64,000 nt of DNA from Octopus sinensis (GCF_006345805.1 NC_043015.1:50902001-50966000); one strand, 5' to 3'; shown: positions 1,403-59,369, numbered from the stretch's first letter. Numbers and translations are program-made. The notes: generated from the sequence alone by a model not told the origin.

Positions 1403-1461
1403 ATGTGACAATTTCACTGGCATTATACTTTTCCACAGTCTGACTGGTGGCACAGGAGCAG
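1403..1461 (+). CDS. TUBZ: zeta-tubulin coding exon (first visible; N-terminal exons lie upstream of the window)
   Basis: ttttgcAG|A-TGT...GCA-G|GTaagg. Translates (R)CDNFTGIILFHSLTGGTGA(G), the tubulin signature loop. 59 nt, phase 2 to phase 1. Confidence 0.9.
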
Positions 1462-3699
1462 GTAAGGTGCTCTACATATATATGTGTGTTTGTGTGTGTG
1501 TATGCATCTCATTGTCTTGAGACATTGTGTGATAATTGTAAACAAGATTCACTGTCATACATGCAGTGTCATTTCTTTCCAGATGTGCAAATCTCTGTTC
1601 TCCTGATCTTCATTAATCTCATCATTTCCTCTACAGAATCTATGTAGTCCTTAGAAGGACATTCAGATTTACCAAGTGAAGATAATTACCGAGTCTAGTA
1701 AATTTCCACTAACTTGAGTTTCACCATCAATCGCTGTAGCCAGCTGGTATTGAGACCTGATATAAGAGGTAACATGGTAGCCACCAAGATTACATGTGCC
1801 TTGAAACCATTTTGGAGAATATTGTGCAGGAGTGGCTGTGTGGTAAGTAGCTTGCTTACCAACCACATGGTTCTGGGTTCAGTCCCACTGCATGGCACCT
1901 TGGGCGAGAGTCTTCTACTATAGCCTCGGGCCGACCAAAGCCTTGTGAGTGGATTTGGTAGATGGAAACTGAAAGAAGCTTGTCATATATATATATATAT
2001 TATATATATATATATATATATATATATATATTATACATCATCATCATTATCATTTAACGTCTGCTTTCCATGCTAGCATGGGTTGGACGATTTGACTGAG
2101 CTCTGGTGAACCAGATGGCTGCACCTGACTCCAATCTGATCTGACAGAGTTTAGTGTTTTTCAGGCATAGTGTATCTTTATCATTATCCAGCATGTCCTT
2201 TGCTGCTGCTGCTGCTGCTGCTGCTGATGATGGTGGTGGTGGTGGTGGTGGGGATGACTGTGATGACGATTTTGATGATGATGGTGATGATGATTGTGAT
2301 GATGATGGTGGTCTTGATGGTGGTGGTGGTGGTGCCCAGTGGCATTTCTGTCTGTCTTTACATTCTGAGTTCAAATTCTGCTAAGGTCGATTTTTGCCTT
2401 TTATCCTTTTGTGGGGGTTGATAAAATAAGAACCCAATTGAGCACTGAGGTTGATATAATCGACTTACCCACCTCCCAGGAAATTGCTGGCCTTGAGCCA
2501 AAATTTGAAATCAATATTTTTTAATTTGGTAAAGGTGTGACTTGAGGGAGATTTTGCTGCTATTTCTTGCAGGTTGGTCACACTTCCCCTTCATTGATTT
2601 GTTTGCCTGTTCATTACAAATTGTGACATGGAAATGATATTCACCAATAACAACCCCATTTGTCTTTGTCGGTTGGTATTTGTTGCGTAAGCCATAAATT
2701 TGTTATACAGTAACCCCTCAACTATTGCAGGTGTTATGTTCCAAAACCTCCCACGATAGGTGAAAATTCATAAACTGTACTGCATGTTTTTTTTTGTATT
2801 ATTTTCATAATTTGTATATACTCTTTTACTTGTTTCAGTCATTTGACTGCGGCCATGCTGGAGCACCGCCTTTTTAGTTGAGCAAATCGACCCTGGGACT
2901 TATTCTTTTGTAAGCCTAGTACTTATTCTATCGGTCTCTTTTGCTGAACCGCTAAGTTATGGGGACGTAAACACACCAACATCGTTTGTCAAGCGATGTT
3001 GGGGGGACAAACACAGACACACAAACATATATGACCGTGGTCGAGACTTTCATAGTCTTTTCAAATGGCTAATAATGTGTGCGCGCACCACTACTACACA
3101 CATTGGAAAGCATTGTACAACCAAGTACTAAAGAAGATCTTTCCTCCTCCATGAAACAAAGCTGTTCCCGCTGGACATCAACCCAGTATTTCTAAGCTAC
3201 GGACCGAGTGATTTATTGTAAGGTTATCTCCCTAGATAGATTGCCTTCACTACGGCTAAGGAGCCCTTTCTACCCCACACACATACATATATATATATAC
3301 ATATATACGATGGGCTTCTTTCAGTTTCCATCTACCAAAGCCACTCACAAGGCTTTGGTCGGCCCAAAGCTATAGTAGAAGACACTTGCCCAAGGTACCA
3401 CGCAGCGGGACTGAACCTGGAACCATGTGGTTGGTAAGCAAGCTACTTACCACAGCCACTGAAATGCAAAATAACCCAACCCACTCGCCTCCCGAGTTTC
3501 GTTTTCCATACACTATGTGCAATTCTTTGTTTACTCATCTATGCTACACTATGCATTTTCTTTTAATATATTTTAATTAATGTTATACAGCATTGTACTG
3601 TATTCTTATTTATTAATTTTTAGGTATGGAAATGCTTATCTTGCCACAATCTAAAAAATATAAATACCTATCAGCTGCAGAAACCATCGTACAAACAAT

Positions 3700-4068
3700 A
3701 ACTCTGAGCACCTTTTCAAACTCCACCCATCTAACACCCGTGGACATATTTACAAAGTCAGAAAACAGCACAGCTCCCATGACTTCAGGAAACCTTTTTC
3801 CATGCTGAGAGTTGCTGAAGCATGGAAAAAACTGCCGGCATCAGTTGTTAGTTGTCGGAGCACTGCATCCTTCAAAACTTCCATGCTTTCTGAGATTCGC
3901 CAACACTACACCTGATTTTCTCCCCTCCATACACACACAGGCATGTATCTGACTCATACATTGTTCGCTTCCCAGACATCTTTACATTACTGCATGTACT
4001 TTATATGCACTTTCTGACAAGTTGTGGTGCACCTGAGCACTGTATACAATAATTTCATTATTATTATT
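3700..4068 (+). mobile_element. CR1-group LINE 3' end
   Basis: HPSNTRGHIYKVRK...LRVAEAWKKLPASVVSCRSTASFKTSM, then 3'UTR and (ATT)n tail. Related copies at 16215-16612 and about 26440-26520. Confidence 0.75.
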
Positions 4069-4196
4069 AAACCCGCGATATACTGCAGAGTCTGCGTGGC
4101 AGAAGTATAAGCACACTGGGCAAAATGCTTAGTAGCATTTCATCTGTTCTGTGTTCAAATTCTACCTAGATCGACTTTACTTTCCATCCTTTTGTA

Positions 4197-4410
4197 GAGG
4201 CGCAATGGCCTAGTGGTTAGGGCAGCGGACTCGCGGTCGCAGGATAGCGGTTTCGATTCTCAGACCGGGCGTTGTGTGTGTTTATTGAGCGAAAACACCT
4301 AAAAGCTCTACGAGGCTCCGGCAGGGGGTGGTGATCCCTGCTGTACTCTTTCACCACAATGGCGGTGCCCCAGCATGGCCACAGCTCAAGAGCTGAAACT
4401 GGAAAAACAA
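4197..4410 (+). mobile_element. tRNA-derived SINE, family B (GGAGGCGCAATGGCCCAGTGGTTAGGGCAGCGGACTCGCGG head)
   Basis: A/B-box-like head. Other copies at 35601-35985 (+), 48300-48597 (+), about 31000-31295 and 31320-31590 (-), and 29360-29400. Confidence 0.75.
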
Positions 4411-56858: not shown

Positions 56859-57256
56859 TCGCTGACCTTGTGCCTTCACTTCGAAAAATACCTGGGACCA
56901 CGCCTGATTTGAAACTGTTAAGTTCTTTACTTTTCATTGTTCATTTTACATTTCAATTATGTATTTACACAGTCTCCGGAGAACTGGAAAATCCAAAAAT
57001 CCGGAACACTTCCGGCCCCAAGTTTACTGGATAATTAGTCCAGTACTGTAATAAAAATAATTAAAGATATGATTCGTTTCCATTTTATGATTTCTAGTTT
57101 TGTAAATGCTCATTTCCGCGCATGCACAACAGGATATCTTATAAAGTTGTCATGGAGTTGTAGGCTGGTAACTGTAAACAATTACTATTATTGTCTGATA
57201 ACTTTACACGTTCTCCTTGACTTGGCTGTTTATTTTTGGTGGCATATTTCAGGAAG

Positions 57257-57293
57257 ATGAGACTCAAGATTTCATTACAAAAAGAACCGAAAC
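57257..57293 (+). CDS. IFT80: IFT80 first coding exon
   Basis: tttcAG|GAAG-ATG. MRLKISLQKEPK(H) vs recalled human MRLKISLLKEPKH. Ends C|ATATCCTTT. Confidence 0.95.
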
Positions 57294-59147
57294 ATATCCT
57301 TTCTAATTCCATAATTACATCACAATTTTATTTATTTATACAAGCAGAAACTTTTTGCTGAAACTTAGTATAAGTTTTACGAATTATGTATGTATGTATA
57401 CGAGTTATGTTTTCATGTATAAGTACACTTGTCAACACTTGTCAATAATTAAATTTACATTCGTTAAATTCGTCTCAGTCCATATTATATATATCATATA
57501 GTAATGAGCAGCTAAAAAAAAAAGGTTATAATTTGCTGGCGAGTTATTATTTTATTTTCGCCACAATAACATTAAACCTGTTGCTTCGTTCTACGACTTT
57601 TCATATTTTATCAATTGTTCCCGCTTTTGAATTTGTATTTTATTATTTATTTTCGTCTACGTTATTCGTTGCTTTGAATTGTTACCATGTTGTTTTTTTC
57701 AGTGTTTATATCTGTCGTGTTTTTCTTGCGACACTGAATAAAAAAAACAAAACAAAACACGTACTTATAATGTTCGCAAACAAACACGAATTAAAAGTCG
57801 AAGCATTCTGTTACCCCCCCCCCGTTTCAGCAGACGGGTGTAATAGTAGGCGTGGCTGTGTAGCTAATAAGTTTAGTTCCCCAACCATGTGGTCTTGGGT
57901 TCAGCGCAGCACCTTGGGTCGACCAAAGCCTTGTGAATGGATTTGGCAGACAGAACTTTAAAGGGCCCCGCTGTACATGCATGCATGTATGTATATATGT
58001 ATGTATGTGTGTGTGTGTGCATGCATGTATGTGTGTGTGTCACCTTGTCTTAACATCGTGTGATAGTTGTAATTGAGTATCACTGCCCTGCGAGTAGTGC
58101 TCTTCATTTTCGATCTTTTTTTTTTTTTGGAAACTTGTTCAGTCATGGAGTAAGGAAGGGCAGAAAATCTACATCAACGAATTGTTTATCTTGGTCATTG
58201 ATACTTCATTCTTCTGAATCCTTAAAACTTGGATTATGCCCTCTATGAATATTAAGCTGGTCCTATAAGGCGGCAACCTGGCAGAATTGTTAGCACTCCG
58301 AGCGAAATGCTTAGTATCGTTTTTAGTCTGTCTTCATGTTCTGAGTTCAAATTCTGCCGAGGTCGACTTTGCCATTCATCCTTTCAGATTCAATAAAATA
58401 AATACCAGCTGAGTACTGGGGTCAATGTAATCGACTGCCCGCCTTCCAAAAAATTGCAGGCCTTGTGCAAAAATTCGAAACCAATATTAAGCACATCTTC
58501 ATCTTTGAATGCCCACTTTTCCATGTTTGCATGAGTTGCACAGAAATAATTGAGGTAGATTTTCTTCAGCGAGATGCCCTTCCTGTCACCCACCCTCACT
58601 TGTTTCCAAACCAGATAATATTTCCCCTTGGCCTGACTCAGTTTTCTGGAGAGGAACAGCATCACTTGAGTGACCATGATGCTCATTTAACAACCGTTTC
58701 CTCATCTCAGGATGAAAGTTCAGATGAACATATGCATTGTTGTTCATTTCCAATATTTCTGTGAAAACTTGTCTGTCCATAGGGTAATATTCCCTTGCTG
58801 GGAAATCAATGAAGGTTGGTGACAGGGAAGACATCCAACCATAGAAAATGTGCCTCAATAAGCTCCATCCAAGTCATGCAGGCATGGAAAAGCAGGTGCT
58901 AAGATGATGATGATGGTAACAAGCTTCTTTCTGTTTCCATCTATTAAATACACTAAAAACTTTGAATATCCTTAGGCTATAGTAGAAGACATTTTTCCGA
59001 GGTGCTGCACAATGGGACTGAACCTGGTACCACAGGTTTGGAAAACAAGATTCTTAACCTCAAGCCATGCTTGCACCTATGATAGCCACACCTGTGCCTT
59101 GTTATTTATCAACGTTTGTCATTATTGCTACCTTAACTCCTTCCAAC
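57294..59147 (+). other. U12-type AT-AC intron of IFT80, 1854 nt
   Basis: 5' ATATCCTTTC, branch CCTTAAC at 59131-59137, 3' AC at 59146-59147. C|AT rebuilds the His codon of KEPKH. Confidence 0.93.
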
Positions 59148-59369
59148 ATAGTGAACTTGTCAGCTGCGTCTGTTGGACATCTCCCGAAGAAGTTTATTCA
59201 GCAGCCGATGACCATCAAATTCTAAAATGGAACTTAAACCTAAATGAAAGCAGCAAATTTGTGACGTTACCCGATGGTGTCTACCCTACCAGTCTTTTGT
59301 GGACCCCTAAAGACGCCGGGAGTGGGAAGAAAGTTGGTTCTGATACATTTGTTCTTACATCAACTGATG
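59148..59369 (+). CDS. IFT80: IFT80 second coding exon (WD40 region); the gene continues beyond the window
   Basis: (H)SELVSCVCWTSPEEVYSAADDHQILKWNL...LPDGVYPTSLLWTPK...DTFVLTSTD(G)|GTaaat vs human [30 protein letters not shown]...FVLTSSDG. Confidence 0.96.

What the first reader, a model, noticed from the sequence alone, without database searches (positions are those of the whole stretch)
1403..59369. Three-gene cilium/basal-body neighbourhood with two minor-spliceosome AT-AC introns and a shared RFX site
Seen: the only three genes in 64 kb are zeta-tubulin (+), CXorf58-like (-) and IFT80 (+). Two contain AT-AC U12 introns, and the head-to-head pair flanks an X-box. Known: zeta-tubulin is a basal-foot protein, IFT80 is IFT-B, RFX factors drive ciliary genes, U12 introns are well under 1% of introns and the AT-AC subtype is the rarer one. 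Inference: a co-regulated ciliogenesis module controlled both transcriptionally (RFX) and by rate-limiting minor splicing. From memory, human IFT80 pairs with SMC4 and CXorf58 with APOO, so this arrangement would differ from the vertebrate one.
Basis: partly seen in the sequence, partly recalled or inferred. Interest (0 to 1): 0.78.

Follow-up and report, generated by a model that had tools for sequence, protein, structure and literature searches.

The report
Ancient IFT80–CXorf58 head-to-head gene pair
In this octopus DNA the cilium-transport gene IFT80 sits head-to-head with the uncharacterised gene CXorf58, an arrangement kept from molluscs to sea urchins and amphioxus, which suggests shared control and a ciliary job for CXorf58. 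The neighbouring zeta-tubulin gene, the two rare AT-AC introns and the proposed RFX site add little beyond what is known or expected by chance.

Summary
The window is octopus DNA, very close to Octopus vulgaris. All three genes are real:
- A zeta-clade tubulin on the + strand, C-terminal 301 codons only, 1403-20112.
- A CXorf58-like gene on the - strand, CDS 47619-29583.
- The first two coding exons of IFT80 on the + strand, 57257-59369.

Both AT-AC U12-type introns are real by sequence: tubulin 9910-13967 and IFT80 57294-59147.

The IFT80 intron lies at the same codon in octopods, scallop, chiton, sea urchin and amphioxus, and is precisely lost in the annelid Owenia. IFT80 is already a known minor-intron gene in human and zebrafish.

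The X-box is weak. X-box-like strings exist at 54318-54331 and 57146-57172, but at chance frequency. No canonical site recurs in other species.

The useful result is synteny. CXorf58 and IFT80 are head-to-head in Octopus, Argonauta, Pecten, Liolophura, Owenia, Strongylocentrotus and Branchiostoma. They are not paired in a frog (ApoO instead), Dimorphilus or bdelloid rotifers. Zeta-tubulin is a neighbour only in octopods.

So there is an ancient two-gene unit, probably with shared promoter control, not a three-gene module under dual control. No held paper mentions both genes. No expression data were available, so co-regulation is inferred.

The parts
1403..20112 (+). Zeta-clade tubulin gene, C-terminal 301 codons in 8 exons: 1403-1461, 4777-4918, 5486-5656, 8759-8854, 9846-9909, 13968-14109, 17339-17496 and 20041-20112 including the stop. 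The first ~110-115 codons lie upstream of the window.
   Evidence: Spliced model. Pfam Tubulin 2e-19. Equally distant from beta, gamma and Asgard tubulins in the PDB. 97% identical to the O. bimaculoides fragment XP_014789290. In an NJ tree it groups with 'delta-like' ~415-430-aa proteins and with Halisarca 'tubulin zeta', apart from true delta.
9910..13967 (+). AT-AC U12-type intron of the tubulin gene, 4058 nt, phase 0. 5' splice site ATATCCTTTT at 9910-9919. Branch-site-like CCCTTAAT at 13947-13954. 3' AC at 13966-13967.
   Evidence: The junction ...DKKF|KSVSNILVGRG aligns without a gap to the homologue P0085, which comes from ~1.3-kb (probably transcript) contigs. The same intron, with ATATCCTTTT and a terminal AC, is present in Argonauta.
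29583..47619 (-). CXorf58-like gene, 363 codons in 8 coding exons: 47619-47527, 45759-45665, 38770-38656, 36749-36618, 35550-35475, 34346-34193, 31803-31656 and 29861-29583. All 7 coding introns are GT-AG. The ATG exon follows a strong acceptor, so an unmapped non-coding upstream exon is likely.
   Evidence: 82 homologues named CXorf58-like/homolog, with 94% identity to the O. vulgaris protein.
57257..57293 (+). IFT80 first coding exon (MRLKISLQKEPK plus 1 nt). It is preceded by an acceptor-like tttcag at 57247-57252.
57294..59147 (+). AT-AC U12-type intron of IFT80, 1854 nt, phase 1. 5' splice site ATATCCTTTC at 57294-57303. Branch site ACCTTAAC at 59130-59137. 3' AC at 59146-59147.
   Evidence: The same position and the same signals are found in O. 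vulgaris, Argonauta, Pecten, Liolophura, S. purpuratus and Branchiostoma. The intron is absent in Owenia.
59148..59369 (+). IFT80 second coding exon (H)SELVSCVCW...LTSTDG, followed by a GTAAAT donor at 59370. The rest of the gene lies beyond the window.
54318..54331 (+). Distal X-box-like string GTCTCTATAGCAAC. It lies 2.9 kb upstream of the IFT80 ATG and 6.7 kb upstream of the CXorf58-like ATG.
   Evidence: It is the best PWM score in the intergenic region, but the count is at chance level. Identical in O. vulgaris, which is not informative.
57146..57183 (+). Proximal block GTTGTCATGG AGTT GTAGGCTGGTAAC T GTAAACAATT. It holds an X-box-like half site, a one-mismatch X-box (57160-57172) and a forkhead-like GTAAACA (57174-57180), 74-111 nt upstream of the IFT80 ATG.
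   Evidence: The 10-mers GTTGTCATGG and GTAAACAATT recur in the same order upstream of the Argonauta IFT80 ATG. 3% of shuffles do as well.

Best explanation
The core of this locus is an ancient divergent (head-to-head) gene pair, IFT80 and the CXorf58 orthologue. It dates at least to the last common ancestor of protostomes and deuterostomes.

The most likely reason it has been kept is that the two genes share promoter-proximal regulatory DNA, as a bidirectional or interlocked promoter. They would then be switched on together in ciliated cells. This makes CXorf58 a strong candidate cilium or IFT-linked gene.

Zeta-tubulin is a later neighbour, specific to octopods, lying tail-to-tail with CXorf58.

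Each AT-AC intron is an inherited property of its own gene. The IFT80 intron is bilaterian-old and is the orthologue of the known vertebrate IFT80 minor intron. The zeta-tubulin intron is at least octopod-old. Their presence in one window is coincidence.

An RFX/forkhead input is plausible for ciliary genes but is not shown by this sequence.

SHOWN: gene identities, intron types and positions, synteny. INFERRED: shared promoter, co-expression, ciliary role of CXorf58.
For: SYNTENY
- A 760-870-aa WD40 gene lies divergently upstream of the CXorf58 orthologue in O. vulgaris, Argonauta (about 2.7 kb), Pecten (1.8 kb), Owenia (4.9 kb), Branchiostoma (about 0.43 kb once the missed exon 1 is added), S. 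purpuratus (1.8 kb) and Liolophura (0.6 kb).
- tblastn finds the IFT80 N-terminal exons in every one of these loci.
- PF23335 Beta-prop_IFT80_2nd is listed for Argonauta and Liolophura.

AT-AC INTRON OF IFT80
- It lies 37 nt after the ATG, with ATATCCTT, a TCCTTAAC-like box and a terminal AC, in 7 taxa.

LITERATURE
- IFT80 is a known minor-intron gene in human and zebrafish (PMC9992838, PMC7507305, PMC13216214).
- CXorf58 was independently predicted to act in motile cilia and spermatogenesis from expression and phylogenetic profile (PMC8317215).

TUBULIN
- It is adjacent only in octopods.
Against: - No transcript, TSS or expression data were available, so co-regulation is inferred from synteny alone.
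- In Octopus the two ATGs are 9.6 kb apart with transposon debris between them. A tight bidirectional promoter is therefore not evident in this window.
- The pair has been lost in tetrapods, Dimorphilus and bdelloid rotifers, so the linkage is dispensable.
- No regulatory motif common to all intergenic regions was found.
- The lineages that keep the pair are also those known for slow genome rearrangement, so part of the retention could be neutral.
Confidence: 0.65

Rival explanations
1. All three genes form one co-regulated ciliogenesis module, driven by a shared RFX X-box and additionally gated by rate-limiting minor (U12) splicing of two of them.
For: - All three genes are cilium or basal-body related by family: the zeta clade (PMC4202323), IFT80, and CXorf58 as predicted (PMC8317215).
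- Two of them carry AT-AC introns.
- X-box-like strings lie between the divergent genes.
- The tubulin neighbour and its AT-AC intron are kept between Octopus and Argonauta.
- Minor-spliceosome defects cause ciliary defects, and IFT80 U12-intron retention is documented in human cells (PMC9992838, PMC4066798).
Against: - The tubulin is absent from the 10-kb flanks in scallop, chiton, annelid, urchin and amphioxus.
- The X-box matches are at chance frequency and are not conserved as canonical sites.
- The middle gene has only GT-AG introns.
- The IFT80 AT-AC intron exists regardless of neighbours, and Owenia lost it while keeping the pair.
- The tubulin is convergent with CXorf58 (3' ends about 9.5 kb apart), not promoter-sharing.
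Confidence: 0.1
2. Neutral retention. The adjacency of IFT80 and CXorf58 is a relic of ancestral gene order that survives in slowly rearranging genomes without any functional coupling. Everything else in the window is coincidence.
For: - The pair is lost exactly in lineages with strongly rearranged genomes or after large-scale change: Dimorphilus, bdelloid rotifers and tetrapods.
- No shared motif was found across phyla.
- The Octopus intergenic distance is 9.6 kb.
Against: - Both the adjacency and the divergent orientation are kept in four phyla (Mollusca, Annelida, Echinodermata, Chordata).
- The other flanking gene differs in every lineage examined, so local gene order has otherwise turned over.
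- Intergenic distances of 0.4-1.8 kb in chiton, amphioxus, scallop and urchin are in the range of bidirectional promoters.
Confidence: 0.2

Closest known systems
Minor (U12-type) intron of vertebrate IFT80, a recognised minor-intron-containing ciliary gene in human and zebrafish (PMC9992838, PMC7507305, PMC13216214, PMC4066798)
   Same: Same gene and the same class of intron. The AT-AC subtype with a perfect ATATCCTT donor and a TCCTTAAC-like branch box lies close to the 3' end. In the invertebrates examined it sits at one fixed codon near the N-terminus.
   Different: The exact position of the human intron could not be checked with the tools in hand, so orthology of the position to vertebrates is inferred. 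New here is its presence at an identical site in cephalopods, a bivalve, a chiton, an echinoderm and amphioxus, and its precise loss in Owenia.
RFX/DAF-19 X-box control of IFT genes, with the site typically 100-250 bp upstream of the coding sequence in C. elegans (PMC2873420)
   Same: One string fits GTHNYYATRRNAAC. Another X-box-like block lies 85-111 nt upstream of the IFT80 ATG, the classical distance.
   Different: Neither is a canonical palindrome. The counts equal chance. Nothing is conserved beyond a 10-mer half site within octopods. No binding or TSS data exist.
Conserved bidirectional (head-to-head) gene pairs, also called ancient metazoan microsynteny kept by cis-regulatory constraint (concept from my own knowledge of the comparative-genomics literature)
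   Same: Divergent orientation, short intergenic spacer in most taxa, and retention across phyla while the outer neighbours change.
   Different: This particular pair was not found in the searched literature: no paper holds both gene names, and none links IFT80 to 'bidirectional promoter' or 'microsynteny'. Promoter sharing is not demonstrated.
Zeta-tubulin of the delta/epsilon/zeta group of centriole and basal-body tubulins (PMC4202323). Its basal-foot localisation in Xenopus multiciliated cells is from my own knowledge.
   Same: The protein falls in the clade with a sponge protein deposited as 'tubulin zeta'. That clade also holds a second, shorter 'delta-like' paralogue found in sharks, Polypterus, Nematostella, Trichoplax and Capitella. 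It lacks the long insertion of true delta.
   Different: Only the C-terminal two thirds is in the window. Classification rests on a distance tree and on depositor names, not on a curated reference set.
CXorf58 / MFI (C11orf65) family (PMC8317215)
   Same: Clear orthologue, 36-54% identical to CXorf58 homologues of vertebrates, amphioxus, urchins, annelids and molluscs.
   Different: The octopod protein lacks the N-terminal extension with the 'SKTSINVKLP' motif seen in other invertebrates. No Pfam family matched in the copy used.

Membership tests
U12-type AT-AC intron | 5' splice site /ATATCCTT directly at the exon end | tested here: met
   9910 ATATCCTTTT and 57294 ATATCCTTTC.
U12-type AT-AC intron | Branch-site box TCCTTAAC-like about 8-20 nt from the 3' end, and a terminal AC | tested here: met
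   IFT80: ACCTTAAC at 59130-59137, AC at 59146-59147. Tubulin: CCCTTAAT at 13947-13954, AC at 13966-13967. The tubulin box has one or two departures from the consensus.
U12-type AT-AC intron | Removal restores the reading frame and the homology without an indel | tested here: met
   IFT80 gives ...EPKHSELVSC..., matching Chlamydomonas IFT80. Tubulin gives ...DKKF|KSVSNILVGRG, which aligns gap-free to P0085 and others.
U12-type AT-AC intron | Conserved position and type in orthologues | tested here: met
   IFT80 in 7 taxa. Tubulin in Argonauta only. Other zeta-tubulin genes could not be fetched.
U12-type AT-AC intron | Actually excised by the U11/U12 spliceosome, and slowly (rate-limiting) | not testable with these tools
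   No RNA data for octopus. Human IFT80 U12-intron retention is published (PMC4066798, PMC9992838).
RFX X-box | 13-14-bp imperfect palindrome GTNRCC(N0-3)RGYAAC, or GTHNYYATRRNAAC | tested here: inconclusive
   54318 fits the nematode form but has 2 mismatches in the left half against GTNRCC. 57160 has 1 mismatch. Frequencies equal chance.
RFX X-box | Lies in the proximal promoter, within about 250 bp of the TSS or ATG | tested here: inconclusive
   The 57146-57172 block is at -111 to -85 from the IFT80 ATG. The 54318 site is 2.9 kb away. TSSs are unmapped.
RFX X-box | Conserved in orthologous promoters | tested here: not met
   No canonical site recurs in the Argonauta, Pecten, Liolophura, Owenia, urchin or amphioxus intergenic regions. 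Only the half site GTTGTCATGG is shared with Argonauta.
RFX X-box | Bound by an RFX protein | not testable with these tools
   Needs ChIP, CUT&RUN or EMSA.
Conserved bidirectional gene pair | Divergent orientation of the same two orthologues in distant taxa | tested here: met
   Seven lineages in four phyla.
Conserved bidirectional gene pair | Short shared intergenic region (about 1-2 kb or less) | tested here: inconclusive
   0.4-1.8 kb in amphioxus, chiton, scallop and urchin. 2.7 kb in Argonauta and 4.9 kb in Owenia. 9.6 kb ATG-to-ATG in Octopus.
Conserved bidirectional gene pair | Co-expression from one promoter | not testable with these tools
   No expression or TSS data.
Zeta-tubulin | Tubulin/FtsZ GTPase fold | tested here: met
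   PF00091 2e-19 on the part present. Full-length alignment to PDB tubulins, residues 1-296 against 127-424.
Zeta-tubulin | Groups with zeta, not delta, epsilon, alpha, beta or gamma | tested here: met
   The NJ tree puts it with the ~415-430-aa 'delta-like' clade next to Halisarca 'tubulin zeta'. Skate and plant 'tubulin delta chain' sequences form a separate clade. True delta has a long insertion that is absent here. This is a distance tree only, with no bootstrap.
IFT80 | Orthology of the N-terminal WD40 region | tested here: met
   The top PDB hits are IFT80, 5e-8. The O. vulgaris neighbour gene is 772 aa with an identical exon 1. Only 87 codons are in the window.
CXorf58 family | Full-length homology to named CXorf58 orthologues | tested here: met
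   98-100% query coverage and E from 1e-60 to 1e-114 against mollusc, annelid, urchin, amphioxus and tetrapod proteins.

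The most novel reading that the evidence does not exclude
CXorf58 is a dedicated functional partner of IFT80, for example an IFT-B-associated or motile-cilium or flagellum factor. On this reading it has been co-transcribed with IFT80 from one bidirectional, RFX/FOXJ1-type ciliary promoter since before the protostome-deuterostome split. Vertebrates broke the unit, with CXorf58 moving next to APOO. 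The synteny then assigns a function to an uncharacterised human gene.
Probability: 0.3. Interest if true: 0.6.

Novelty: new member of a known kind. Interest (0 to 1): 0.45.

Why it matters
CXorf58 is one of the human proteins with no assigned function. The only published hypothesis, a role in motile cilia or spermatogenesis, rests on expression and phylogenetic profile (PMC8317215).

A head-to-head linkage with the IFT-B gene IFT80, kept in molluscs, an annelid, an echinoderm and a cephalochordate, is independent genomic evidence for a ciliary role. It also gives an experiment that can be run in tractable embryos (sea urchin, amphioxus, scallop): does one short intergenic fragment drive both genes in ciliated cells, and does loss of CXorf58 phenocopy IFT80?

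The comparison also shows that the IFT80 minor intron, medically relevant in minor-spliceosome disorders, is a fixed AT-AC intron of bilaterian age. Gene predictors often miss the exon in front of it or read into it.

The three-gene, dual-control module as proposed would have been more striking, but the evidence does not carry it.

Tried and rejected
1. Conserved promoter block. I first took a 211-bp stretch (54146-54356), identical between the window and O. vulgaris, as a conserved promoter block around the distal X-box. A locus-wide comparison showed 14 longer perfect runs, up to 917 bp. The two genomes are too close for this to be informative, so the argument is withdrawn.

2. Non-coding first exons near 54.3 kb. 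I considered a minus-strand donor TGA|GTAAGT at 54294 and a plus-strand donor TTTC|GTAAAT at 54409. Nothing supports them beyond splice-site resemblance. The donor scan and the CpG profile were uninformative. The Octopus-Argonauta shared 10-mers point instead to an IFT80 promoter near 57.1 kb. TSSs stay unresolved.

3. Other ATATCCTT occurrences (12065+, 41440-, 42813+, 43872+, 50500-, 58966+). None lies at an exon end of the three genes. The 41440 site follows an open frame with no homology to CXorf58.

4. Cross-species X-box scans. I used a 14-mer PWM written from memory and the consensus GTNRCC(N0-3)RGYAAC with up to 1 mismatch. There was no enrichment in any intergenic region. A post hoc pattern, GTCTCYN{2,3}GCAA, hits the IFT80-proximal region in Octopus, Pecten (-143) and amphioxus (-203). 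It was derived from those same sequences, so it is only a lead.

5. Local alignment of Octopus against Argonauta intergenic DNA. There was no significant alignment.

6. Searches that led nowhere.
- Exon-fragment queries to the protein database.
- Look-up of P0001, and of the spliced CXorf58-like protein, in the assembly index.
- Pfam for the CXorf58-like protein.

Human TUBB, IFT80 and CXorf58 were used only to locate exons. Every identity claimed rests on database results.

Full report
WHAT THE WINDOW IS. The sequence is A+T-rich animal DNA full of SINE- and LINE-derived repeats; 48% of it matches itself elsewhere in the window. The CXorf58-like protein is 94% identical to an Octopus vulgaris protein. 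The tubulin fragment is 97% identical to O. bimaculoides XP_014789290. The locus aligns to O. vulgaris chromosome OX597832.1 at about 93% over 42 kb, with perfect runs of up to 917 bp. It is therefore an Octopus genome very close to O. vulgaris.

CHECKING THE GENES. I read stop-free segments on both strands, located exons, and inspected every junction.

- Tubulin, + strand.
  - Eight exons from 1403 to 20112 encode 301 residues, starting at the ...HSLTGGTGAG signature. The N-terminal third is upstream of the window.
  - Pfam gives Tubulin at 2e-19.
  - Against the PDB it is about equally far from beta, gamma and Asgard tubulins, E 1e-17 to 1e-22, so it is a divergent family member.
- CXorf58-like, - strand.
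  - Eight coding exons from 47619 to 29583 encode 363 residues.
  - It returned 82 homologues, most named 'uncharacterized protein CXorf58-like/homolog', from molluscs, annelids, a nemertean, rotifers, echinoderms, amphioxus and tetrapods.
  - No Pfam family matched.
  - The literature treats CXorf58 as uncharacterised and a paralogue of MFI/C11orf65. It is predicted from expression and phylogenetic profile to act in motile cilia and spermatogenesis (PMC8317215).
- IFT80, + strand.
  - The ATG is at 57257. Coding exons are 57257-57293 and 59148-59369, followed by a GT donor.
  - No further exon was found before 64000.
  - The 87 residues match Chlamydomonas IFT80 end to end, 5e-8.
- Nothing else gene-like is present. 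There is one weak tRNA-like hit in a SINE. There are also reverse-transcriptase and PHD remnants of retroelements.

ZETA OR DELTA TUBULIN? An exhaustive HMMER search found a tight set of ~402-430-aa relatives with E from 1e-95 to 1e-44. Their source names are mostly 'tubulin delta chain-like', from sharks, Polypterus, Nematostella, Trichoplax, Capitella, Oscarella, Styela and a sea slug.

- One relative, from the sponge Halisarca, was deposited as 'tubulin zeta', while UniProt auto-names it 'delta'.
- In a neighbour-joining tree of 99 sequences the octopus protein sits inside this clade, next to the Halisarca zeta.
- The cluster that carries plain 'tubulin delta chain' of skates and rays, together with plant delta tubulins, forms a separate clade.
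- Cartilaginous fishes thus hold both paralogues. True delta shows a long insertion that the octopus clade lacks.
- Findeisen et al. state that delta and zeta always form a common group, and that zeta is missing from eutherians (PMC4202323). This explains the automatic naming.

I accept 'zeta-tubulin', with the caveat that this is a distance tree without support values.

THE TWO AT-AC INTRONS.

- Tubulin intron 9910-13967: ttt|ATATCCTTTT ... CCCTTAAT, 12 nt, AC|aaa.
- IFT80 intron 57294-59147: aac|ATATCCTTTC ... ACCTTAAC, 8 nt, AC|ata.
- Both join the exons in frame.
- The IFT80 junction gives ...EPK-H-SELVSC..., as in Chlamydomonas.
- The tubulin junction ...DKKF|KSVSNILVGRG aligns without a gap to P0085, which comes from ~1.3-kb (probably transcript) contigs, and to other homologues.
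- The other 13 coding introns are GT-AG.
- The 8-mer RTATCCTT occurs 8 times in the window against 5.9 expected. Its placement at exon ends, not its presence, is the evidence.
- The O. bimaculoides tubulin model reads into this intron and carries a spurious N-terminus.

HOW OLD ARE THE INTRONS? In loci fetched for the synteny test, IFT80 has ATATCCTT exactly 37 nt after its ATG, with a TCCTTAAC-like box 8-10 nt before a terminal AC. This holds in O. vulgaris (donor only; the 3' end lies outside the fetched locus), Argonauta, Pecten, Liolophura, Strongylocentrotus and Branchiostoma. In Owenia the two exons are fused, a precise loss.

IFT80 is already listed among human minor-intron genes, and its U12 intron has been assayed in human fibroblasts and zebrafish (PMC9992838, PMC7507305, PMC13216214). 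Its retention is exosome-sensitive in human cells (PMC4066798). So this intron is known in kind. Its fixed position across Bilateria is an extension, and I could not verify the human position. The zeta-tubulin AT-AC intron is present at the same codon in Argonauta. Other zeta-tubulin genes could not be fetched.

IS TWO OUT OF THREE SURPRISING?

- Humans have 722 minor introns in 699 genes (PMC7507305), and about 26% of them are AT-AC (PMC10639083).
- With roughly 20,000 genes (my own figure), about 1% of genes carry an AT-AC intron.
- The chance that at least two of three neighbours do is then about 2-3 in 10,000, which is a handful of such triplets per genome.
- Molluscs are relatively rich in minor introns (PMC10639083), and ciliary genes are over-represented among minor-intron genes (PMC7507305). 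Both raise the expectation.
- In a whole-genome scan one such window is therefore unremarkable. This is an estimate, not a test.

THE X-BOX.

- The nematode consensus GTHNYYATRRNAAC matches twice in the window (54318 and 60470) against 0.64 expected; 16% of shuffles reach two.
- The 54318 site, GTCTCTATAGCAAC, lies 2.9 kb from the IFT80 ATG.
- The consensus GTNRCC(N0-3)RGYAAC with one mismatch allowed gives 24 sites in the window. Only one lies between the two ATGs, against 3.6 expected: GTAGGCTGGTAAC at 57160-57172, 85 nt upstream of the IFT80 ATG.
- That site belongs to a block GTTGTCATGG..GGTAAC.GTAAACAATT at 57146-57183. Its two 10-mers recur in the same order upstream of the Argonauta ATG; 3% of shuffles share as many.
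- GTAAACA is also a forkhead-type core (my own knowledge).
- In the much shorter intergenic regions of scallop, chiton, annelid, urchin and amphioxus, no canonical X-box stands out.
- The X-box is therefore a possibility, not a finding.

Using the CXorf58 orthologues returned, I fetched their loci with 10-kb flanks.

- A 760-870-aa WD40 gene lies divergently upstream in seven lineages: O. vulgaris, Argonauta hians, Pecten maximus, Owenia fusiformis, Branchiostoma, Strongylocentrotus purpuratus and the chiton Liolophura sinensis.
- tblastn with the octopus IFT80 N-terminus finds both first exons in every one of these loci, except O. vulgaris, where only exon 1 lies inside the fetched flank. The IFT80-specific Pfam model PF23335 is listed for Argonauta and Liolophura.
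- Distances from the IFT80 ATG to the annotated CXorf58 start:

| Taxon | Distance |
|---|---|
| Amphioxus (after adding the exon 1 that the annotation missed in front of the AT-AC intron) | about 0.43 kb |
| Chiton (Liolophura) | 0.6 kb |
| Scallop (Pecten) | 1.8 kb |
| Sea urchin (S. purpuratus) | 1.8 kb |
| Argonauta | 2.7 kb |
| Owenia | 4.9 kb |
| Octopus | 9.6 kb |

It is also absent in Dimorphilus and in bdelloid rotifers.
- On the other side of CXorf58 the neighbour differs everywhere: zf-CCCH in Owenia, TMEM254 in the urchin, and nothing called in scallop and chiton.
- Zeta-tubulin is there only in Octopus and Argonauta.
- No held paper contains both 'CXorf58' and 'IFT80'. None pairs IFT80 with 'bidirectional promoter' or 'microsynteny'.

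INTERPRETATION. The three-gene picture resolves into three separate things.

- An ancient two-gene unit, IFT80 and CXorf58.
- An octopod-specific tail-to-tail neighbour, zeta-tubulin.
- Two independent, gene-intrinsic AT-AC introns.

Retention of both adjacency and divergent orientation in four phyla, while the outer neighbours turn over, is what cis-regulatory coupling predicts. I rate a shared or interlocked promoter as the best explanation (0.65). Purely neutral retention in slowly rearranging genomes remains possible (0.2). The dual-control three-gene module is unlikely (0.1).

WHAT I COULD NOT DO. I could not map TSSs, measure expression or intron retention, test RFX binding, or compute a genome-wide background for pair retention. 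I withdrew one argument of my own, a 211-bp 'conserved block' around the distal X-box, after finding that such perfect runs are common between these two very close genomes.

VERDICT. The conserved IFT80-CXorf58 head-to-head pair is a new example of a known kind of arrangement. It is useful as functional evidence for an uncharacterised, probably ciliary, gene. Interest is moderate.

Noticed in passing
L002 6060-6330 (Argonauta hians, IFT80 sense strand): The 3' end of the IFT80 AT-AC intron, together with the first ~25 nt of the next exon (TATTTATACCTTAA(C/A)TCCTGCAAAC|ATAGCGAGCTTGTAAGCTGTGTG), is present in about five tandem copies. Only the last copy continues into the real exon. These are several decoy U12 branch and acceptor sites in a row.
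   Followed up: no
L004 5086-4961 (Owenia fusiformis): IFT80 exons 1 and 2 are fused ([22 protein letters not shown]...). This is a precise loss of the otherwise conserved AT-AC intron, while the head-to-head pairing with CXorf58 is kept.
   Followed up: partly
L005 6712-6676 (Branchiostoma); window 13872-13967 versus P0001: AT-AC introns mislead public gene models. The amphioxus IFT80 model starts 3 kb downstream and lacks exon 1. The O. bimaculoides tubulin model XP_014789290 reads through the 3' part of the AT-AC intron and begins with about 25 spurious residues.
   Followed up: partly
window 42640-43470 and 43700-44530: A tandem duplication with a period of 1059 bp. Identical ORFs occur at 42974-43246 and 44033-44305 and on the opposite strand. 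It lies inside the long CXorf58 intron 2.
   Followed up: no
L003 about 8300-8330 (Pecten) and L008 about 9630-9650 (Liolophura), upstream of IFT80: A 14-mer, AAACAAATATGGCG, is shared by scallop and chiton in the IFT80-CXorf58 intergenic region. It combines a forkhead-like ACAAATA with a YY1-like AAATATGGCG. This is a candidate conserved promoter element of the pair in molluscs.
   Followed up: no
L003 8173-8190 and L005 6713-6730: The sequence GAACCGGCAAA(C)ATGAG, directly in front of the IFT80 start codon, is shared by scallop and amphioxus but not by octopods or the urchin.
   Followed up: no
window 56975-57130: Upstream of the proximal X-box-like block there are paired ETS-like sites CCGGAACACTTCCGG and an NRF1-like CCGCGCATGCAC. 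This is typical of TATA-less or bidirectional promoters and argues that the IFT80 promoter is near 57.0-57.2 kb.
   Followed up: no
CXorf58 orthologues P0008-P0033 versus the window protein: Non-cephalopod invertebrate CXorf58 proteins have a 55-120-residue N-terminal extension with a conserved S-K-T-S-I-x-V-K-L-P motif. Octopus and Argonauta proteins start at the IQ-like exon and lack it. Homologues P0004, P0005 and P0007, from ~1.7-kb (probably transcript) contigs, have a different extension.
   Followed up: no
window 18717-19415 (-), 52317-52958 (-), 62218-63138 (+): Retroelement remnants: zf-RVT, a LINE C-terminal region and a PHD finger. They lie inside introns and the intergenic region. 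The insert at 52.3-52.9 kb helps explain why the Octopus IFT80-CXorf58 spacer is so much longer than in other taxa.
   Followed up: partly
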